The notes beneath the pieces are model-generated. The model made no database searches. It saw nothing but the letters and a program-made list of their open reading frames with translations, and had not been told where the DNA came from. A program made the position numbers and the translations under genes. From positions 62,001 to 126,000 of IMG/VR virus record IMGVR_UViG_3300020122_000238: DNA of 64,000 nucleotides; one strand, given 5' to 3'. Position 1 is the stretch's first letter. Each line of letters starts with the position of its first letter. Positions 13,547 through 49,321 of the stretch are shown here, one piece after another.

Positions 13547-13779
13547 CGGCGATGCCTCGAAGCATTGGCCGCGGGACGGCTAACGCAAGCGAAGTCACCA
13601 TCAGCGCGTGGGATTTCTTTGGCGTTGGGTTTGATCATGGGGTATGCCTCGTGAAGAACCTACACCCAAAAGGGGCCCGCGATCAACCGCGCCCAGAAAT
13701 CGACCCCATGGCGAAAAGCTTGGTGTAAGGGGCTCGGGTCATCAGCATCAGCAAATCGAATCAGAAGAGGGTTTCCATC

Positions 13780-14514
13780 ATGGGCAAGCTTTGCCAGATC
13801 ATCGCGGTCGAAAAGGGTCTCAAGTCGAAGGCGTACGACGAGCTGAAGACCTACCACAAGGAGCTGAAGAAGCCGGCGCAGCTCGAAGGGTTCTCGCGGA
13901 CTTACGCGCCCTTCTCGGACACGCAGGAAGAGCGGCTTCCGCCGGAGCTGAAGCACGTCCAGCTCAAGGCCGCGGATGCCATCGAGCACACGGTGAAGGT
14001 CCTCACGGAGGCCTTCGACATCACGGCCACGAAGGAGTGGGGCAACACCATTGCGCGGGCGGACATCATCGTGGATGGCAAGCTTCTCCTTGCGGATGTC
14101 CCCGTCGGCGTGCTTCTCTTTCTGGAGCACCAGCTCGACGACCTCACCACGTTCATCGGCTCGCTCCCGACCCTCGACCCGGCCGAGTCGTGGACATATG
14201 ACGAGAACCAGGCCTGCTTCGCCACGGCCCCGGCCACCACGCAGCGGACGCGGAAGACGCCCACTGTCATCACGAAGGCGGAGCCCACCCAGTTCCACCC
14301 GGCCCAGACCGAGATTTTCATGGAGGACAAGGCGATCGGCCAGTTCACCGTCGTCAAGCGCTCGGGGGCCCTCACGGCGACGCGGGTCAACGTGCTGAAG
14401 GACCGCGTCACGAAGCTCCGGATCGCCGTGAAGTTCGCGCGTGAGGAAGCCAACACCATCGAGGTTGAGAACCGTCACATCGGGGCGACGATTCTCAACA
14501 ATCTCTTCGCATAA
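13780..14514 (+). CDS. Uncharacterised 244-aa protein (MGKLCQIIAVEKG...AVKFAREEAN; recalled as DUF7873-like, unverified), candidate partner of the downstream ncRNA
   Basis: Very strong GC3 codon bias, SD AGAGG, TGGTGTA motif at 13721-13727; sequence resembles a widespread bacterial/phage family of unknown function. Confidence 0.8.
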   Translation: MGKLCQIIAVEKGLKSKAYDELKTYHKELKKPAQLEGFSRTYAPFSDTQEERLPPELKHVQLKAADAIEHTVKVLTEAFDITATKEWGNTIARADIIVDGKLLLADVPVGVLLFLEHQLDDLTTFIGSLPTLDPAESWTYDENQACFATAPATTQRTRKTPTVITKAEPTQFHPAQTEIFMEDKAIGQFTVVKRSGALTATRVNVLKDRVTKLRIAVKFAREEANTIEVENRHIGATILNNLFA

Positions 14515-14540
14515 CGTCGAGATCTGGTGTACTAAATATT

Positions 14541-14975
14541 TGAGTGCAGTCTCAGAGTAAGAGTCAGCTTCAGTAACTCTCTCTCCGAAAAGGGCAGGTT
14601 CGATTCCTGCCCCCCCTACCAAGCCGTCCAGTATCCGATTGTGGCTCCTTTGTTGGAGCTTTGCAATTGCACGGGACGGCTTGGTAGGGGGGTAGCCCAG
14701 ATGGCAGAGGCATAGGCGAGGGGCCCGATTCTTCTTCTCACTCCAGACTCAGCAGAACCGATACGACATCAATCTAAGGGTCAGGTCAATACGCCAAAAC
14801 GCTGGTTCAAATCCAGCCCTCCCAGCAGGGCGCTCGTACATTGGTCGAGCTTCGTGCTGGGAGGTGGTCTAGCGGTAGGACGTGGTGTCTAAGCTTGAAT
14901 CTGATCCAACGCTGTGGTGCCGTGTAAAAAGCGGAACTAGAGGACCCCCTAGAAGGCTATCTTGGGGGTCTTCGT
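14541..14975 (+). ncRNA. Structured ncRNA with two tandem circularly permuted tRNA-like (YrlA/Y-RNA-like) domains
   Basis: T-arms GCAGG-TTCGATT-CCTGC 14594-14610 and GCTGG-TTCAAAT-CCAGC 14801-14817, each followed by a loop-closed acceptor stem (19 bp and 10 bp) and then a D-arm (14693-14712, 14865-14881); own TGGTGTA motif at 14525-14531 and downstream hairpin. Confidence 0.8.
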
Positions 14976-14981
14976 CTATTT
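14940..14981 (+). terminator. Putative intrinsic terminator of the ncRNA
   Basis: GAGGACCCCC 14940-14949 pairs with GGGGGTCTTC 14964-14973, followed by GTCTATTT (weak U tract). Confidence 0.55.
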
Positions 14982-15003
14982 GGGGGTCTTCGTCTATTTG
15001 GGG
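14962..15003 (+). repeat. 18-bp tandem duplication TTGGGGGTCTTCGTCTAT x2.3
   Basis: Exact copies 14962-14979 and 14980-14997, plus partial copy. Confidence 0.9.
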
Positions 15004-15035
15004 TGTGTGATTTTGATCATGGTGTAATAACCCCC

Positions 15036-15647
15036 ATGGCGAACTACAGCTACATCGATCTCCTTGGCGAGCTGACGGAAGAGGCCTTCGAGGCGGCCCT
15101 CACGGCTGCGGCTGCTCGGACGTTGAACCCGGACTGGAAAGTCGAGCGAGCATCCTTCGAGGATGGGGGTCCCGTCTGGATGGTTACTCTCCCGGGCACG
15201 GCTCCGGAGCCCACGGAAGAGACTCGCAAGCTCCCTTTCTTCTGCCAGGATGAGGATGTGGGGTTCATGGTAGCGCTCCAGCCCAGCCGGGTGGCCTTCC
15301 GCCATGGACCGATCACCCCGTTTGAACGGTGGGCGCAGGGTCGCATCGAGGAAGAGCTGGCAGACTTCTTCAACGTCGGCGTGTTCTACGATGCGACCGA
15401 CAGGATTGCTCCGCCGGGGACTCGGGAATACCGAACGGGGACGACATACGAGGACTATGTGTTCCGTAAGTGGACGCCGACCCCTGCCGAGCTGGAGTCA
15501 GTGAAACACGACTTCGAGAGATGGATCCCCAAAGGACAATCCAGGGAGGATCGTGTTCGCAAGTTCCAGAAAATGGTCCAGGGGTTGCCTGATGTCCCCG
15601 TTGTGGACATTTTCGAGAGGCCTGGTGTAAGGGAAGACCATGACTGA
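15036..15647 (+). CDS. Hypothetical protein
   Basis: ATG 15036 lies 9 nt after TGGTGTA. Confidence 0.7.
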   Translation: MANYSYIDLLGELTEEAFEAALTAAAARTLNPDWKVERASFEDGGPVWMVTLPGTAPEPTEETRKLPFFCQDEDVGFMVALQPSRVAFRHGPITPFERWAQGRIEEELADFFNVGVFYDATDRIAPPGTREYRTGTTYEDYVFRKWTPTPAELESVKHDFERWIPKGQSREDRVRKFQKMVQGLPDVPVVDIFERPGVREDHD

Positions 15648-16872: not shown

Positions 16873-19800
16873 ATGCACGACACCCAGATGATCTACGACC
16901 GTCGTCAGGCCGCCGATGAAGAGGTTGTCGAGGTCGACAAGACGTTCGGCGAACTCCAGATCGCCGAATACGTGGTCTTCCTTTTCGCCCTCGATACCTA
17001 CATGAGATACATGGAGGAGGTTGGGCTCCCCCATGACGAGATGACGGCCAACGGGCTGAAGCTGCTCCGAATGGCGGACATGCTTCACGGCGAGGTCATT
17101 GCTGGCTACATGAAGGCCAACCTCCCGTCGGACACCCACAAGAAGATGCTGGAGAAGGCTCTCCGGCTGAGGCCAACCCCTGATGGGGCTGCTCGCCGGG
17201 CTCTCCAGATCCGCACCCTGCTCTCTCGGGGTGGTGCCTCGACAATGCGAGCGGTGTTCAGCACGAACAAGGCCCTCCAAGAGGTTCGAGCGGCCATCGC
17301 GGCATCCATGGTGGACGATGCTGATGCCGCTCTTGACAAGTTCGCGGTCATCCCCGTCAAGAACATCCGGATTCGTAACTGGATCGACGAAGCTGCCAAA
17401 TTGGCAGGGTCGGGAGTTCCTCCGACACCGGTGACTGCGGTGAGCCAATCTGGCGGTCGAGTCGACGCGTCCAGGGAGCTGACCGTCGAGCGCATGAAGG
17501 CGGAAGCTGCCGACCCAGCTTCTGAGGAGACGAAGGGCACCTCGGACCGTCAAGACAAGATCATCTCTCGGGTCCAAGAAGAAGCTCAGGCGACGGCCTT
17601 GAAGTCCCTGGACGCCAAAAACGAGCCCGATGCCCCTGTCACGAAGTCTCAGGTTGTTGGCATCGCGGCTGCAACTGTAGCAGCCGCGATGGCGGACCCC
17701 GAAGACCTGAAGAACGTCCCGGAGCCCCTCCGTACTCTCGACCCGGAGCAACGGGGAGCGGCTCTCACGGACGGCAAGGTTCTCATTGCTGCGGGAGCCG
17801 GTGCTGGGAAGTCGACGACCCTTGTCGCTCGAATTCAGTACCTCATCAAGGATCGTGGGGTCAAGCCCGGCCGCATCCTGGCTTGTTCGTTCAACCGTAA
17901 GGCGGCGAACGAGCTGAGGGACAAAATCGCCAAGAAGTGTGGCGAGAACGAGATGAAGCAGATGTCCGTGGGGACGATGCACTCGCTCTTCATGCGCTTC
18001 ATCGTGGGTGATCGGGGATCCAACATCCCGGCCTTCGGCACCCCCGCAGAACAGAAGCTTTTCTCCGAGGAGCGACTCATCGCCAACCCTGAGCCGGGTC
18101 AGAAATTCAAGAAGGGCCCGAAGCCCATCAACCACACACTGGCGATTCAGGGCGTAATAAAGGAATGCGGACCGATCGCGCTCGCTTCCTACTACAAGGT
18201 CGATCCGAAGACGTTGGAGGACGGTAGTTCCAGCGCTAAGAAGGCGAACCTCCATATCAATGTGTGGAAGGGCAACGATGTCTCCCCCGAGCAAGCGCTT
18301 GCCAATGCAAAATCAAAAGCAGAAATCTTTGCTGCGATTTGGTATCATATCGGATCGGGGCTCAAGGGAGACATTCCGGGCTGGCGTCCGCCGTGCTCTC
18401 AGAGCAAGACCGCCGACAAGTGGATGGACACATTCCGTCCCGGCAAGGAGCGACTCGGGGACCTTGACGACATGGTCAAGGTCTACCGGGACATCCTCGT
18501 GCGTGACCCCAAGGCCCGCGCCTTGGTTCAGAACATGTTCGATCACATCCTCGTGGACGAGTGCCAGGACCTCAACACGGTTCAGCACCAAGTCTTCGAT
18601 CTGATGTCTCAGCACATCACGGACGGCAAGGACGGCAAGTCCCTCTGGATGGTCGGTGACGACAAGCAGGCCATCTACCAGTTCCGCGGGGCTCGCCCGG
18701 ACCTTTTCACGGCCCTCAACGGCAAGGAGGGCTGGAAGACTCGGATGATCAAGACGAACTACCGCTGCGCTCCGGAGATCGTCGAGTGCGCCAACAAGCT
18801 CGTCGCCCACAACACGAACCAGATCCCGATGGAGGCTCGTGCGAACCCGAAGAAGGCTCGCAAGGAAGCTTCGATCGAGGTCACGGTGCCGGGGGACAAC
18901 GCTTCTGGGGCCATCTATACCCTTCAGCGGATCACGAAGGAGCTTCGTGCGAATCCGACGAGCGAGGAGAAGGACTACGCTGTTCTCGCTCGTACGAACA
19001 ACGAGCTGAATGACTATGAGACGGCCTGCATCATCGAGGGCATCCCGTACACCCGCGTGGGTGGTTCGAGCTTCCTGGAAGCCCCTGAGTCCAAGGCCGT
19101 GCTCGGCTACCTCGACCTCGCGGGCGGGACCAACTTCGAGAAGATGCAGCTCTCGTTGGCTTCGAGCCTGACGAAGCCGGATCGCGGTCTCTACCTCTCG
19201 ACTGACAAGGTGGCCGAGATCGTCAAGGAGGCTCTCCAGGACATCGCTCGCGGGGACGGGATGGACGTGAAGTCTCTCAACCCCTTTGAGGTGATCACCA
19301 AGAGGGTCTACGCCCGCCAGCTCGCCGAAGCCCTCAAGCAGCCCTACAAGAACAAGCTGATGGCCACGGGGGATTGGCTCTGGCGGAAGTCTGTCGATGA
19401 GATGACAGAGACCCTTCTCGAAATGGGGACTCAGGTCGCGAAGCTCAAGAAGACGATCAACGACACGTCGATGCCCGTCGAGGATGTCTTCAAAATCATC
19501 CTCGACGACGTCAAGGCAACGACGGGCTACCGCAACAACCGGACGGGGGAGGACACCCGGAAGACCGTTACTCTTCGAGAGCAGATCTCGAACGACATGT
19601 CCCTCTACTCGGATGGGAGTGAGGACGCCGAGGAAGAGGAAGAGCCGGACTCCGTCAAGCCTGTCGTTGATGACGAGGGCAACCTCATGCTCCCCAAGAC
19701 GGAGGGAGAGCCTGGAGTTCCTTCGGCACCTCCCGCTCCGGAGAACCCTGCCAAAGGGCTTGGAGCTGTGCAGTTCCTCTACCAGATCGCACAGCCGAAT

Positions 19801-20382
19801 GCGCAGGACCACGACTTGGGGCATGACCCGACGACGGCTCTGGGCTTCATTAAGAAGCTGGAGCGCTACTCGGATGCCTCGAAGACGCTTCGAGTCGACC
19901 TCAAGAAGTGGGCCCTGGATCAGAAGAAGCTCCCGCCGGAGCAGCGGGAAGAGCGTCCGCGGTGCATGGTACTTTCCACGGTCCATTCGGTCAAGGGAGC
20001 CGAGTGGCCAAATGTGTTCGTATGTATGCCGGCGGGTATCTTCCCGGTCGAGAAGAAGCCCAAGAAGGATGAGCCCCCGCCCGACCCAGAAGAGGAGCTG
20101 AGGAAGCTCGAAGCGGAGCGGAACCTCGCCTACGTCGCTCTTACCCGGGCCGCAAAGAACCTCACCGTGGTCTGTGCCAAAGCTCCTTCACGGTTCGTCT
20201 TCGAGGCAGGCCTCAAGCCGGGGGAGAACGTCGAGAAGGACGTTCCTCTGGTTACAGAAGAGGGTACTCCGAAAACGGCTGAGGAGGACTTCGGAGACCA
20301 CGGGCCCCCGCCCTTCGAGGACATGGCTTCTTACTTCATGACAGCCGGCGGGGTTGACTCCTCGTACGATCGGAGGGCGTGA
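16873..20382 (+). CDS. UvrD/PcrA-family SF1A DNA helicase with ~270-aa N-terminal extension
   Basis: Motifs LDPEQ, AGAGAGKST, FNRKAANEL, VDECQD, VGDDKQAIYQFRGA, NYRC, LARTN, STVHSVKGAEW, AYVALTRA. Confidence 0.93.
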   Translation: MHDTQMIYDRRQAADEEVVEVDKTFGELQIAEYVVFLFALDTYMRYMEEVGLPHDEMTANGLKLLRMADMLHGEVIAGYMKANLPSDTHKKMLEKALRLRPTPDGAARRALQIRTLLSRGGASTMRAVFSTNKALQEVRAAIAASMVDDADAALDKFAVIPVKNIRIRNWIDEAAKLAGSGVPPTPVTAVSQSGGRVDASRELTVERMKAEAADPASEETKGTSDRQDKIISRVQEEAQATALKSLDAKNEPDAPVTKSQVVGIAAATVAAAMADPEDLKNVPEPLRTLDPEQRGAALTDGKVLIAAGAGAGKSTTLVARIQYLIKDRGVKPGRILACSFNRKAANELRDKIAKKCGENEMKQMSVGTMHSLFMRFIVGDRGSNIPAFGTPAEQKLFSEERLIANPEPGQKFKKGPKPINHTLAIQGVIKECGPIALASYYKVDPKTLEDGSSSAKKANLHINVWKGNDVSPEQALANAKSKAEIFAAIWYHIGSGLKGDIPGWRPPCSQSKTADKWMDTFRPGKERLGDLDDMVKVYRDILVRDPKARALVQNMFDHILVDECQDLNTVQHQVFDLMSQHITDGKDGKSLWMVGDDKQAIYQFRGARPDLFTALNGKEGWKTRMIKTNYRCAPEIVECANKLVAHNTNQIPMEARANPKKARKEASIEVTVPGDNASGAIYTLQRITKELRANPTSEEKDYAVLARTNNELNDYETACIIEGIPYTRVGGSSFLEAPESKAVLGYLDLAGGTNFEKMQLSLASSLTKPDRGLYLSTDKVAEIVKEALQDIARGDGMDVKSLNPFEVITKRVYARQLAEALKQPYKNKLMATGDWLWRKSVDEMTETLLEMGTQVAKLKKTINDTSMPVEDVFKIILDDVKATTGYRNNRTGEDTRKTVTLREQISNDMSLYSDGSEDAEEEEEPDSVKPVVDDEGNLMLPKTEGEPGVPSAPPAPENPAKGLGAVQFLYQIAQPNAQDHDLGHDPTTALGFIKKLERYSDASKTLRVDLKKWALDQKKLPPEQREERPRCMVLSTVHSVKGAEWPNVFVCMPAGIFPVEKKPKKDEPPPDPEEELRKLEAERNLAYVALTRAAKNLTVVCAKAPSRFVFEAGLKPGENVEKDVPLVTEEGTPKTAEEDFGDHGPPPFEDMASYFMTAGGVDSSYDRRA

Positions 20383-47149: not shown

Positions 47150-49321
47150 ATGGCTGCTCAGGCTAACTGGAAATCGTTCAAGCTACAGGTGCCCGGCGAG
47201 CCCCTACTGAAGAAAATTAGTACGGCGCTGGAGACGCTCGTCACCCTCTTGGACGTTCTCAAGGCCATTCTGGAGACAGTCAAGGTCTTTCTGATCGACT
47301 TCGGGAACCCCATCAAGGCCATCGTTCAAGCCCTGATCGACCTCGTCACGAAGCTCTTCAAGACGCTACAACGGTCGGGCTTCTACCTCTACCTGGACAT
47401 CCCGGACCCTTCGAAGGACCCGAGCTTCAAGAGGCAAGTTGGGGGCTATCGTGGGTTCGCCCAGCGCTTCAAGTCTTCCCTCGTCGACAGCAAGGACCCC
47501 AACCGCCCTCAGCCCACCTCGGGTTTCTTGACGGGAGGCTACGTCGTCCTCCTCGTTGACGTGGATGGACCGGTTCAGTTGTTGACGCGGATCCAGGTTC
47601 TTCTTCGCCTCTTCGGACAGGAGTTCCTGAACCCCCATTACGCAGCTCCGTCGAACGTGAGGGTCCTCCCTGTGGGCGCAAAGGGAGACCCCATTTTGGC
47701 GATCTCCAAAATCTTCACGACGCCTCCGACGGCCCTTGCCATCGAGTGGTCTCTTCCTTCCACGACCCCGGGACCGGACCCGGGCTTCTCTGGGATCACA
47801 TCCCAGATCAGCACGGAGTTCTACCCCCCGAAGTGGCTCATCGAGAAGAGCACGACCCCTCCGGTTCAAGAAGTCCCGGATGATCAGCTCGGCGACAACT
47901 CCCTTGCTGGCTACGTCACGACGCAAATCGAGTCCAACTATATCGACCCCCGAAACAACAATCTGCCGATCAAGAGGAAGATCAAGCTCAAGGATGAGTA
48001 TGGGGACCCCTTCGTCAAGATGCAGGAATACATCGTAGTTGACGCTTCGGTCAACTCCATGTCTTTCTTTCTCGGGCAACTAGGCACCTTCCGGTATATC
48101 GACAAGAACGTTGAGCCCGATAAGGCCTACTTCTACAGGGTTAGGGCCTTTTCTGGCGAACTGGCTATCTCCGGCAAGACTATCACCTTCGAGAAGCCCT
48201 CTCAGAACTTGAACGATGGTGGGAAGTACTTCCTACGTTGGCCTGGCAAAAGCGCTACAAATCCACCCATCGTTGGCCGGGGGTCATCTATCCTTCGGGG
48301 GAGGATTCCAAAACTCCCGCCCAACTTCGATGTCATTGGGGTTTTGAAGGCCGTCTATCTCACGGCCTTCTCCCTCGACTTCCACTTGCCGGCGGCGCCT
48401 GGAGACAAGTTCAACTCCCAGGGGCTCCCGCTCGATGATTCAACTTTGACGAGTCACATCGGGATGGGGTCGCTCACGAGTCAGGCTGGATCTCTTGCAG
48501 CATTCTCCTCTGTCCCGATTCTGAACCTGCTCAGCCAAGCAACGTCTCTGACGACCAGCTCGAACCCCGTCACGGGGAATCCTCTGTCGATGCCATGGCA
48601 GCGGAAGGCGGTTCGTTTTCAGTCTTCCCGGCTGACGATCGCGATCACGTCGGCGATGCTTGATGCAGGGGGATCCTTCGTCGAGGGCTTCCGAGGCTTC
48701 ATGCAGGGGCCTCTTCCCAAGGGGACAATCAACATCTCGTGGCCGACTCCCACGGACACGTTGGAGAAGCTCGTCCTGGCGTTCACGAGGGTCGACCAGG
48801 GGCATGTGAGCGATGACACGGCAAAAGCCTGGAAGCTGGCTTTTGCCAACCCCCAGGTGCGCCTTAACGTCCTGGCAGTGGTCAACTATTTGAGGACCTT
48901 CACGTTGGGGGGTTCACGTCCCGACTGGATCCAGGTCTCTCTTCTACGAGACATCATCCCATGGGCGGGGCAGTTCCTCTATGACATCATTGCCAAGATC
49001 CAGGCTCTTGTGGACGCCTTCCGAGGGGTGGTCGACGAGATCAAGGCCTTCATCGACCTGCTCATCCGCAAGATCGACACCTTGGAGAAATTCATCAAGT
49101 TCCTTCTGTCGATTCTCGATTTCATCGAGAGCCTCCAGATCGACTTCGCCGTCCTCTTCATCCCGTCAGTCTCGGGTGATGTTGGAGATTGGATCGCGGC
49201 GTTTGATGGGGCTCAGAACCAGCCAACGAGCGGACCTCAAGGGTATGCAGCGGGGATCGCTTTGGCCTATCTCGCACCGGATGTTGCGGATCTCGTTTCA
49301 GCTCTCCAGCTCATCTTCTAG
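47150..49321 (+). CDS. Structural protein with terminal amphipathic helices and FN3-like middle
   Basis: YIDKNVEPDKAYFYRVRAF is FN3-like; operon context. Confidence 0.65.
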   Translation: MAAQANWKSFKLQVPGEPLLKKISTALETLVTLLDVLKAILETVKVFLIDFGNPIKAIVQALIDLVTKLFKTLQRSGFYLYLDIPDPSKDPSFKRQVGGYRGFAQRFKSSLVDSKDPNRPQPTSGFLTGGYVVLLVDVDGPVQLLTRIQVLLRLFGQEFLNPHYAAPSNVRVLPVGAKGDPILAISKIFTTPPTALAIEWSLPSTTPGPDPGFSGITSQISTEFYPPKWLIEKSTTPPVQEVPDDQLGDNSLAGYVTTQIESNYIDPRNNNLPIKRKIKLKDEYGDPFVKMQEYIVVDASVNSMSFFLGQLGTFRYIDKNVEPDKAYFYRVRAFSGELAISGKTITFEKPSQNLNDGGKYFLRWPGKSATNPPIVGRGSSILRGRIPKLPPNFDVIGVLKAVYLTAFSLDFHLPAAPGDKFNSQGLPLDDSTLTSHIGMGSLTSQAGSLAAFSSVPILNLLSQATSLTTSSNPVTGNPLSMPWQRKAVRFQSSRLTIAITSAMLDAGGSFVEGFRGFMQGPLPKGTINISWPTPTDTLEKLVLAFTRVDQGHVSDDTAKAWKLAFANPQVRLNVLAVVNYLRTFTLGGSRPDWIQVSLLRDIIPWAGQFLYDIIAKIQALVDAFRGVVDEIKAFIDLLIRKIDTLEKFIKFLLSILDFIESLQIDFAVLFIPSVSGDVGDWIAAFDGAQNQPTSGPQGYAAGIALAYLAPDVADLVSALQLIF

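What the first reader, a model, noticed from the sequence alone, without database searches (positions are those of the whole stretch)
14541..14577. Exact 6-nt-periodic AG repeats at the ncRNA 5' end, echoed in the partner gene's leader
Seen: AG recurs at 14548, 14554, 14560, 14566 and 14572 (AGTCTC AGAGTA AGAGTC AGCTTC AGTAAC), and again at 14745 and 14751 (AGACTC AGCAGA). The ~43-nt leader of the adjacent protein gene has ATCAGC ATCAGC AAATCG AATCAG next to its SD (13741-13770). Inference: these are iterated sites for an oligomeric RNA-binding protein (TRAP/Hfq-like logic). The ncRNA could nucleate or titrate the protein, and excess protein could repress its own translation.
Basis: partly seen in the sequence, partly recalled or inferred. 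Interest (0 to 1): 0.62.

Follow-up and report, generated by a model that had tools for sequence, protein, structure and literature searches.

The report
Phased hexamer array in tRNA-mimic RNA
The 6-base repeats are real and conserved: they form a single-stranded U-N-A array at the 5' end of an undescribed ~440-nt RNA with two tRNA look-alike domains, always encoded next to an uncharacterised protein (DUF7873) in large phages and many bacteria, and most likely serve as iterated docking sites.

Summary
AG sits at 14548/54/60/66/72 and at 14745/51. Within this window alone that is only weakly unusual, but the same positions are invariant in homologues from six bacterial phyla and about 80 phage contigs.

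The conserved feature is not AG. It is U-N-A every 6 nt (unit A-R-R-Y-U-N, 4-5 copies).

The tract opens a ~440-nt structured RNA (about 14541-14980) that no Rfam family matches. Its order is:
- a 5-6 bp closing helix P1;
- the hexamer array;
- permuted tRNA-like module 1;
- a second array;
- permuted tRNA-like module 2 on a long stem;
- a terminator.

The helices covary strongly. The array columns covary with nothing, so the array behaves as sequence-constrained single strand.

The only conserved neighbour is the DUF7873 gene. That protein has no known fold, and self-association is predicted for it. In phages the pair often lies inside tRNA gene arrays.

Phage DUF7873 leaders are enriched for the same units next to the Shine-Dalgarno sequence. 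Leaders of the bacterial copies, mostly Streptomyces with GTG starts, are not.

No expression data could be obtained.

The parts
13721..13727 (+). TGGTGTA promoter-like motif upstream of the DUF7873 leader
   Evidence: 13 copies in the window against 1.66 expected. Copies lie just upstream of genes and of the ncRNA. A GGTGTA motif is kept at the same place in L165, L162, L164 and L166.
13741..13770 (+). DUF7873 leader: AUCAGC AUCAGC AAAUCG AAUCAG, then the Shine-Dalgarno-like AAGAGG (13765-13770)
   Evidence: Sequence. The two AUCA(G/A)C units are conserved in L082 and L165. Phage leaders of the family are enriched for tract-like units.
13780..14514 (+). DUF7873 gene (244 aa)
   Evidence: Pfam PF25283, E 4e-90. 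2402 homologues, all unnamed. No known fold. Self-association predicted: ipSAE 0.67 against a best control of 0.00.
14525..14531 (+). TGGTGTA promoter-like motif upstream of the ncRNA
   Evidence: A GGTGTA motif holds the same position before GGAGUGCAG in L165, L162, L164 and L166. In other lineages a -10-like box sits here instead.
14541..14980 (+). Whole ncRNA (approximate ends)
   Evidence: MFE z-score -7.0 for 14515-15030. Covarying helices throughout. Terminator-like hairpin with a T-rich tail at 14952-14973. No Rfam family and no tRNA or tmRNA call. The ends are inferred, not mapped.
14542..14546 (+). P1 5' strand (GAGUG), pairs with 14739-14743
   Evidence: P1 columns are 95-100% paired in 67 unique sequences, with CG 49, UA 9 and GC 1 at one pair. 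5 of 6 pairs show double changes in A2.
14547..14573 (+). 5' hexamer array. Invariant A at 14548/54/60/66/72 and U at 14552/58/64/70. Unit A-R-R-Y-U-N.
   Evidence: No covariation with the 3' tract, within the tract, or between units.
14594..14610 (+). T-arm of tRNA-like module 1 (5 bp, loop UUCGAUU)
   Evidence: 96% paired, 3 pairs with double changes.
14611..14692 (+). Acceptor-like stem of module 1. The 7 bp 14611-14617:14686-14692 are closed by a hairpin (14618-14685) that starts with ACCA (14618-14621).
   Evidence: 100% paired, and all 7 pairs show compensatory changes. N-CCA after the 7-bp stem is seen in many homologues.
14695..14711 (+). D-arm of module 1
   Evidence: 100% paired.
14726..14754 (+). 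3' tract. U at 14730, 14736 and 14742 (6-nt steps). P1 3' strand CACUC at 14739-14743. Then one more unit, A14745..U14749-C-A14751.
   Evidence: HMM hit at 14726-14754. Column statistics. Same-sense units, not complementary to the 5' array.
14801..14817 (+). T-arm of tRNA-like module 2
14818..14864 (+). Acceptor-like stem of module 2 (14818-14824:14858-14864), closed by a hairpin
   Evidence: 7 pairs, each with 4-14 sequences carrying double changes. Coordinates.
14867..14881 (+). D-arm of module 2
14778..14907 (+). Long stem carrying module 2. In the window GGGUCAG 14778-14784 pairs with CUGAUCC 14901-14907. An inner 5-bp stem is 14792-14796:14883-14887.
   Evidence: The family-level 9-bp stem has many compensatory changes. 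The window register was set by eye, because MAFFT mis-registered it.
14940..14973 (+). Terminator-like hairpin, followed by GUCUAUUU
   Evidence: 14952-14973 and 14963-14992. The equivalent GC-rich hairpin ends the RNA in homologues.

Best explanation
The repeats are an array of 4-5 phased single-stranded recognition units. Each unit is A-R-R-Y-U-N, with U and A fixed and a step of exactly 6 nt. The array sits in the large 5' internal loop of a ~440-nt RNA that carries two circularly permuted tRNA-like domains. The most likely ligand is the co-inherited DUF7873 protein, which would bind as several copies (dimers or a higher oligomer) with one unit per binding site. That would make a ribonucleoprotein in which the tRNA mimics are the working end, by analogy with Y RNA and Ro. 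In phage versions, similar units in the DUF7873 mRNA leader next to the Shine-Dalgarno sequence would let free protein repress its own translation. The RNA would then set the protein level. Shown: periodicity, conservation, RNA architecture, gene-RNA linkage, lack of base-pairing constraint, leader enrichment. Inferred: who binds, stoichiometry, autoregulation, biological role.
For: Periodic invariants hold across 67 unique sequences from six bacterial phyla and many phages. An alignment-free test gives 35/61 and 13/48 against about 1 expected. All surrounding helices covary: 92% paired against 75% in shuffles, covariation 0.47 against 0.15, and 0 of 500 shuffles reach it; 30 of 31 pairs in the second half show double changes. 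The array columns have observed canonical pairing equal to chance for every partner tried. DUF7873 is the only window gene conserved next to the RNA. The RNA follows the gene in 73 of 80 bacterial loci by HMM, in 4 more by eye, and in most phage loci by T-loop spacing. Four copies of DUF7873 give ipSAE 0.67 against a best control of 0.00; that mark was reached by 20 of 30 solved pairs of one chain and 1 of 23 single chains. The runs share at least 84% of contacts and the partner pLDDT is at least 82. This job held four copies and my own alignment, unlike the calibration. Phage leaders are enriched for the unit, and the window's two leader units are kept in L165.
Against: DUF7873 has no recognisable RNA-binding fold and a pI of 5.7-7.0. 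The predicted interface uses the same residues on both copies, which is a dimer contact and does not by itself give a 6-nt ruler. Bacterial leaders show no echo. The window's own leader scores poorly against the family unit (rank 48 of 66). L162, L164 and L166 keep the protein's invariant residues although their array has lost strict phase. The 3'-most unit may instead be part of the stem under module 1 (U33:A3 98%, N34:C2 79%).
Confidence: 0.45

Rival explanations
1. RNA-only role. The phased units are tertiary-contact or self-assembly elements, for example docking sites for the two tRNA-like elbows or contacts between copies of the RNA, as in the phage RNAs ROOL and GOLLD. DUF7873 would act elsewhere.
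For: Large phage RNAs near tRNA islands are known to form RNA-only homo-oligomers (PMC12286853). This RNA sits inside phage tRNA arrays. Fixed U and A with a free middle base fit U-turn-like (UNR) geometry; that point rests on my own knowledge and was not tested. The protein does not look like an RNA binder.
Against: Strict co-inheritance with DUF7873 needs another explanation. There is no covariation between units or with any other tract column. Tract-like units in the mRNA leaders have no reason to exist under a purely structural role.
Confidence: 0.2
2. The units are read by another partner: a host protein, the ribosome, or tRNA anticodons. Each unit can be read as an N-U-N triplet followed by a fixed A, like a T-box specifier codon with its 3' purine. 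The RNA would then capture or sense tRNAs with A35 anticodons.
For: The module is embedded in same-strand tRNA arrays in many phages. The fixed U is the middle base of a triplet followed by an invariant A (PWM). The T-box analogy is from my own knowledge.
Against: Nothing here tests it. A 6-nt spacing of bound tRNAs is sterically demanding. The leader echo next to the Shine-Dalgarno sequence points to a regulator of DUF7873 synthesis rather than to tRNA capture.
Confidence: 0.15
3. The tract is coding or tmRNA-like. A-R-R|Y-U-N reads as (Lys/Arg/Ser/Asn)(Leu/Phe/Val) dipeptide repeats. The order tract, T-arm, acceptor 3' strand with CCA, loop, acceptor 5' strand is that of two-piece tmRNA.
For: The codon-pair reading fits the base preferences. 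There is a weak hit of the T-arm and acceptor to the permuted beta_tmRNA model (17.8 bits against a gathering score of 84). N-CCA follows the 7-bp acceptor stem in many sequences.
Against: There is no conserved frame: the distance from the 5' array to the 3' array modulo 3 is 18/25/22. The first in-frame stop lies 8-158 codons away. No in-frame start exists in about half of the sequences, the window included. ARAGORN finds no tmRNA. The window acceptor stem is A1-U72, G2-C71, G3-C70, so it lacks the G3:U70 alanine identity pair. A full D-arm is present, unlike tmRNA.
Confidence: 0.05
4. Chance or low-complexity sequence with no function.
For: Within the window alone the pattern is only mildly unexpected.
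Against: Phase and bases are conserved across phyla and phages.
Confidence: 0.01

Closest known systems
YrlA-type bacterial Y RNAs (partner Ro60/Rsr)
   Same: Both have a tRNA-like domain in permuted order (T-arm, closed acceptor stem-loop, D-arm) on top of a long stem formed by flanking sequence. Both are encoded beside a dedicated protein and occur in bacteria and phages. [quoted passage not shown] Here both modules have 7-bp stems, often followed by N-CCA.
   Different: This RNA is about 440 nt rather than 80-130 nt. It has two modules and a phased hexamer array. Its partner is DUF7873, not a TROVE protein. No TROVE gene is in the phage record or near the bacterial loci. The GNCGAAN0-1G motif is only approximated (GYCGAWCR) in homologues and absent in the window. 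No Rfam family reaches threshold.
TRAP / HutP-type iterated triplet sites (and CsrA-RsmZ-type titration)
   Same: Short fixed triplets recur at a constant step in single-stranded RNA. A possible decoy RNA is paired with sites at the Shine-Dalgarno sequence of an mRNA. The logic is multivalent binding by an oligomer.
   Different: The triplet is U-N-A with a strict 6-nt step and only 4-5 copies, plus 2-3 in the second tract. The protein has no sequence or fold similarity to TRAP, HutP, CsrA or Hfq. The array is part of a large tRNA-mimic RNA. The regulated gene would be the binder itself.
ROOL and GOLLD (large phage ncRNAs near tRNA islands)
   Same: These are large, highly structured RNAs of unknown function encoded by phages and prophages, often next to or within tRNA gene clusters (PMC12286853; context here).
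   Different: There is no Rfam match to either. This RNA has a dedicated protein neighbour, explicit tRNA-like modules and a hexamer array. It is also common in bacterial chromosomes (64 of 121 Streptomyces species genomes sampled).
Two-piece (permuted) tmRNA
   Same: The gene order is circularly permuted around the acceptor stem, with CCA encoded before the closing loop and a single-stranded tract upstream of the T-arm.
   Different: There is no conserved tag frame or stop, no G3:U70, a full D-arm is present, and ARAGORN is negative.

Membership tests
YrlA / bacterial Y RNA | tRNA-like domain with T-arm, acceptor-like stem-loop and D-arm in that order | tested here: met
   Present twice, with strong covariation.
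YrlA / bacterial Y RNA | Encoded within about 4 kb of a TROVE (Ro60/Rsr) gene on the same strand (PMC4201824) | tested here: not met
   No TROVE match in the 275-kb phage record, which is 58% complete. In 4 of 5 bacterial genomes a TROVE-like gene exists but not at the locus; for example it lies 146 kb away in G001. Co-occurrence in 121 Streptomyces genomes is weak: 40 have both against 34 expected.
YrlA / bacterial Y RNA | GNCGAAN0-1G motif near the 5' end (presumed Rsr site) | tested here: inconclusive
   Upstream of the module 2 stem, L002 and L011 carry an exact match to this motif (GUCGAACG, GCCGAACG), while most other homologues only approximate it (GCCGAACA, GUCGAUCG). The window has CCGAUACG. 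This was checked by eye only.
YrlA / bacterial Y RNA | Length 80-130 nt; match to a curated model | tested here: not met
   About 440 nt. No Rfam family at gathering score or at E up to 10 other than noise.
TRAP/HutP-like iterated-site regulation | Fixed triplets at a constant step in unpaired RNA | tested here: met
   U-N-A every 6 nt with zero-entropy U and A columns and no covariation.
TRAP/HutP-like iterated-site regulation | Partner protein belongs to the TRAP or HutP family or forms a ring oligomer | tested here: not met
   Pfam gives only DUF7873. No fold match. The predicted contact is a two-fold dimer interface. The true oligomeric state is unknown.
TRAP/HutP-like iterated-site regulation | Protein binds the sites and controls expression | not testable with these tools
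   Needs EMSA, footprinting and reporter assays. Only the indirect leader enrichment is available.
Two-piece tmRNA | Tag reading frame with a conserved stop; G3:U70; detected by ARAGORN | tested here: not met
   The window acceptor pairs were read.
Cas7/RAMP backbone (6-nt periodic RNA binding) | RRM/RAMP fold with a thumb hairpin | tested here: not met
ROOL / GOLLD | Match to the Rfam covariance models | tested here: not met
   No gathering-score hit in the 64-kb window.

The most novel reading that the evidence does not exclude
DUF7873 plus this RNA is a new class of ribonucleoprotein of phages and bacteria. RNase P and 3' trimming would cut at the two 7-bp acceptor stems to give a multi-piece RNA with free CCA ends, that is, split tRNA mimics held together by P1 and the long stem. 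The phased N-U-N-A array would act as a codon-like or ruler element that engages tRNAs, the ribosome or tRNA-targeting enzymes. The particle would work in tRNA supply, repair or decoying during phage-host conflict.
Probability: 0.1. Interest if true: 0.95.

Novelty: new variant of a known kind. Interest (0 to 1): 0.8.

Why it matters
If right, this defines an undescribed and very widespread RNA-protein pair. There are more than 2400 DUF7873 proteins. The gene is present in about half of the Streptomyces species sampled, in Chloroflexota, cyanobacteria, Acidobacteriota, Myxococcota and Armatimonadota, and in many large phages, where it sits among the phage's tRNA genes. It would add a third example, after Y RNA and tmRNA, of a tRNA mimic built by circular permutation. 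It would also add a rare natural case of a strictly phased 6-nt protein ruler on RNA. It gives a first testable handle on a domain of unknown function, on why phages place structured RNAs in tRNA islands, and on a possible self-limiting circuit with decoy RNA against mRNA leader.

Tried and rejected
- **Rfam and ARAGORN.** Rfam at gathering score on the whole window and at E up to 10 on 14400-15100 gave only noise and a weak permuted-tmRNA T-arm hit. ARAGORN found no tRNA or tmRNA.
- **Covariance model.** I used profile-HMM anchoring and MAFFT/RNAalifold instead. The HMM alignment could inflate invariance in a repetitive tract, so I added an alignment-free test.
- **Array paired with the 3' tract** (register sum 36). 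Rejected: the variable positions pair at 19-50%, as expected by chance.
- **Mini-hairpins with U-N-A-R tetraloops, and unit-unit AGCU self-pairing with tandem G.A.** Rejected: observed pairing equals expected.
- **Small ORF or tag frame.** Rejected.
- **Cas7-like fold.** A lead from weak Foldseek rows was not confirmed.
- **Other protein-level searches.** The PDB sequence search, NCBIfam and PADLOC and the protein-atlas features gave nothing.
- **Link to Ro60/TROVE.** Not at the locus, and only weak co-occurrence.
- **Coupling of protein changes to array loss in L162, L164 and L166.** None seen.
- **Literature.** No paper holds "DUF7873". Three further searches found no description of this RNA.
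- **Promoter spacing.** My first promoter-spacing pattern was mistyped and found nothing.

Full report
**1. What is at the coordinates**

The finding lies in a 515-nt gap (14515-15029). The gap separates a 244-aa gene (13780-14514, + strand) from the next ORF.

The leader 13741-13770 reads as reported and ends in AAGAGG, 9 nt before the ATG.

Within the window these patterns are only mildly unexpected:
- AG-N4 x5 occurs twice against 0.12 expected. The second hit is an unrelated coding site at 47973.
- The A/T version occurs once against 0.10 expected.

**2. The surroundings**

The window is part of a 275-kb IMG/VR virus record that is 58% complete, so it is a large phage.

The gene is a full-length member of Pfam DUF7873 (E 4e-90). 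NCBIfam and PADLOC give nothing for it.

The gap folds far better than shuffles (z = -7.0). Even so, no Rfam family and no tRNA or tmRNA is called in it.

By eye it holds two circularly permuted tRNA look-alikes. Each runs T-arm, then a 7-bp acceptor stem closed by a hairpin, then D-arm.

A motif TGGTGTA occurs 13 times in the window against 1.66 expected. It lies just upstream of genes, including 13721 (before the DUF7873 leader) and 14525 (10 nt before the start of P1 at 14542). This argues for a separate transcript starting near 14541. A terminator-like hairpin with a T-rich tail ends the region near 14973.

**3. Relatives**

DUF7873 is widespread:
- It is encoded in at least 592 stretches of the species-representative genome set. 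These include Streptomyces, Kitasatospora, Dactylosporangium, Chloroflexota, cyanobacteria, Blastocatellia, Polyangiales and Armatimonadota.
- It is in 89 IMG/VR contigs, many of them 100-430 kb.
- 2402 proteins match at E up to 1e-3, and all are unnamed.
- It is in 64 of 121 Streptomyces species genomes sampled.

None of the window's other neighbours has a homologue in the 80 bacterial loci. The conserved unit is the gene plus the roughly 400-450 nt after it.

T-loop motifs follow the stop codon at about +100 and about +250 in nearly all loci. Short HMMs of the two tracts hit within 420 nt downstream in 73 of 80 bacterial loci, and four AT-rich ones are evident by eye.

In many phages the pair sits inside same-strand tRNA arrays. 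There are up to 19 tRNA genes within about 5.7 kb.

**4. RNA architecture**

*First half (A2, 28 diverse sequences).* T-arm 1, the 7-bp acceptor stem 1, D-arm 1 and an outer helix P1 (GGAGYG with CRCUCC) are 92% paired, against 75% in column shuffles. The covariation score is 0.47 against 0.15. No shuffle out of 500 reaches it, and slid registers score about 0.1.

*P1 in 67 unique sequences.* P1 is 95-100% paired at four of its five core positions. One pair shows CG 49, UA 9 and GC 1.

*Second half (A3).* T-arm 2, acceptor stem 2, D-arm 2, a 9-bp stem and an outer 6-bp stem are predicted. 30 of the 31 pairs show double changes.

*Overall order.* P1, 5' array, module 1, 3' tract (which contains the P1 3' strand), linker unit, long stem with module 2, conserved tail, terminator.

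*Variation.* In a Streptomyces subgroup module 1 is replaced by a plain hairpin while both tracts stay.

*Window coordinates.* These are listed under parts. The outer stems of module 2 in the window were set by eye because MAFFT mis-registered them.

**5. The repeats themselves**

In A2 the invariant tract columns are window A14548, T14552, A14554, A14560, T14570 and A14572. T14558, T14564 and A14566 are at 90% or more.

In 67 unique HMM-anchored sequences the columns A11, U15, A17, U21, A23, A29, U33 and A35 have zero entropy, and U27 is 64 of 67. The columns between them carry 0.4-1.9 bits.

The unit is A, R (A .66, G .26), R (G .55, A .34), Y (C .74, U .17), U, N (G .64, C .26). The G is a window peculiarity, and a fixed U two bases upstream of each A was missed.

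An HMM can flatter a repetitive tract, so I also counted without any alignment. Three or more consecutive U.A at exact 6-nt steps occur in the 72 nt before the first T-loop in 35 of 61 phage and 13 of 48 bacterial non-redundant sequences. Dinucleotide shuffles give 1.1 and 0.9.

The 3' tract carries same-sense units. U is fixed at window 14730 and 14736. P1's 3' strand follows. Then comes A14745..U14749-C-A14751-G, whose A, U, A and G are invariant or nearly so.

**6. Is the array base-paired?**

Mutual information over all tract columns finds P1 and nothing else.
- The antiparallel register that would pair the two tracts holds only where both sides are invariant. It fails at the variable positions, which are 19%, 30% and 50% paired.
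- Three-bp hairpins with U-N-A-R loops show observed pairing equal to chance.
- AGCU-type pairing between any two units also shows observed pairing equal to chance.
- Only the last unit may extend the stem under module 1.

The array therefore behaves as a sequence-constrained single strand, set in an asymmetric internal loop between P1 and module 1.

**7. Is it coding?**

The unit can be read as (Lys/Arg/Ser/Asn)(Leu/Phe/Val) codon pairs, so I tested this directly:
- The 5' and 3' tracts are in no fixed frame (distance modulo 3 is 18/25/22).
- The first in-frame stop lies 8 to 158 codons downstream.
- About half of the sequences, the window included, have no in-frame start.

The permuted order resembles two-piece tmRNA, and the beta_tmRNA model weakly hits the T-arm and acceptor (17.8 bits against a gathering score of 84). 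However, there is no tag frame, no G3:U70 in the window stem, and a full D-arm is present. ARAGORN is negative.

**8. The protein**

The AlphaFold2 model (pLDDT 75, pTM 0.60) shows a helical bundle with a sheet and a long hairpin.
- Foldseek against the PDB finds nothing significant. Several weak rows are Cas7 chains of Cascade, an attractive lead because Cas7 binds RNA in 6-nt steps.
- The ESM Atlas returns only DUF7873 itself.

That lead is therefore not supported.

The protein is near neutral (pI 5.7-7.0).

Four copies folded together give ipSAE 0.67 against a best control of 0.00. That mark was reached by 20 of 30 proteins solved as pairs of one chain and by 1 of 23 solved as single chains. 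The runs share at least 84% of contacts and the partner pLDDT is at least 82. This job held four copies and used my own alignment, so the calibration counts hold only roughly.

The same residues appear on both sides of the interface, so it is a two-fold dimer contact. This supports self-association but shows neither a ring nor RNA binding.

**9. The leader "echo"**

Scoring 50-nt leaders with the unit matrix gives these results:
- Phage DUF7873 leaders exceed upstream controls and shuffles (p 5e-10 for two units, 2e-8 for three). Bacterial ones do not. By eye most of the bacterial ones are Streptomyces genes with a GTG start and no obvious Shine-Dalgarno sequence, possibly leaderless.
- With the Shine-Dalgarno region removed (-60 to -14) and 509 other-gene leaders from the same loci as controls, the shift persists (p about 3e-8 and 2e-8). 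Scores of 8 bits or more occur in 13% against 2%.
- Clear cases are L153, L084, L101, L137 and L150, where units abut the Shine-Dalgarno sequence.
- The window's own leader scores low with the family matrix (rank 48 of 66). Its own array is also atypical (5.3 bits against a median of 17.9).
- Its two AUCA(G/A)C units are kept in L165 (73% protein identity) while the flanks differ.
- In L162, L164 and L166 both the array phase and the leader units are different, yet the protein keeps the family's invariant residues.

**10. Interpretation**

The best reading is that the array is a set of phased docking sites. DUF7873 is the likeliest ligand because it is the only co-inherited component, because self-association is predicted for it, and because its own phage leaders carry similar units next to the ribosome-binding site.

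It does not match the named families.

The tRNA-like modules make the RNA a relative in design of YrlA Y RNAs (PMC4201824). The 7-bp acceptor stems followed by N-CCA invite RNase P cleavage, as shown for M. smegmatis YrlA. Membership fails, however, on partner, size and motif.

The genomic setting recalls ROOL and GOLLD (PMC12286853).

The rivals cannot be excluded without experiments. They are RNA-only tertiary or assembly contacts, another ligand including tRNA anticodons, and a tmRNA-like template.

**11. Limits**
- No expression or end-mapping evidence exists.
- No covariance model could be built.
- RNA ends, processing, binding, stoichiometry and function are all inferred.
- Sequence sets were thinned by k-mer similarity but remain phylogenetically related, so the p-values are indicative.

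Noticed in passing
window 10963, 11694, 13721, 14525, 15020, 15623, 21575, 23274, 40038, 60280 (+); 31934, 49682, 56958 (-): TGGTGTA occurs 13 times against 1.66 expected, typically just upstream of ORF starts and of the ncRNA. It is probably a phage-specific promoter or regulatory motif. A GGTGTA motif is also found before both the gene and the RNA in the related contigs L165, L162, L164 and L166.
   Followed up: partly
window 14964-14999: An 18-nt unit (GGGGGTCTTCGTCTATTT) is directly repeated twice. It overlaps the terminator-like hairpin and lies just before the next TGGTGTA at 15020.
   Followed up: no
window 14618-14621; homologous loops in L002, L004, L011, L014, L038, L099, L129 (module 1) and L005, L024, L038, L070, L100, L110, L118 (module 2): The 7-bp acceptor-like stems are followed by N-CCA (ACCA in module 1, UCCA in module 2) before the closing loop. 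RNase P cleavage plus trimming could therefore release CCA-ended split tRNA mimics, as reported for M. smegmatis YrlA.
   Followed up: partly
L013, L018, L030, L036, L040, L041, L048, L053, L054, L062-L064, L080: In this Streptomyces subgroup tRNA-like module 1 is replaced by a simple hairpin. The hexamer array, P1, the 3' tract and module 2 are kept.
   Followed up: partly
A1; loci L001-L080 compared with L084-L161: Bacterial DUF7873 proteins from six phyla are unusually alike. Mean column identity is 82% in A1, with the window copy as the outlier in that alignment. Phage copies are 35-51% identical to the window copy. This suggests recent horizontal spread or very strong constraint in the chromosomal form.
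   Followed up: no
L113, L118, L145, L116, L156, L161, L090, L129, L099 and others: In phages the DUF7873-RNA pair is embedded in same-strand tRNA gene arrays. Suppressor-like tRNA calls (anticodons tta, cta) lie nearby in L136, L149 and L092.
   Followed up: partly
window 16873-20382 (+): A 1169-aa UvrD/PcrA-like helicase with an extra N-terminal region of about 290 aa. Its best PADLOC matches are GajB-type helicases (E 4e-53). It is not conserved next to DUF7873 elsewhere.
   Followed up: no
G001, G010, G011, G024, G041, G044, G064, G071, G092, G097, G104, G111 (Streptomyces genomes): A TROVE-like gene (partial Pfam match over about 60 residues in ORFs of about 550 aa) lies 65-146 kb from DUF7873 on the same contig in many Streptomyces genomes. 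This is probably chromosomal synteny, not an operon. Co-occurrence is 40 with both, 24 and 25 with one only, and 32 with neither.
   Followed up: partly
L164 6089-6967: This relative has an 880-nt gene-free gap after DUF7873, about twice the usual length. The RNA occupies the first roughly 450 nt and the rest is unexplained.
   Followed up: no
homologues, tail after module 2 (A3 columns 219-260); window 14908-14935: A conserved tail motif follows the long stem: UUAAACG, then GYCGGYGUGCGCAAAUGGGCGGCA in bacteria. Its UUAAA resembles one more array unit. The window version is divergent.
   Followed up: no
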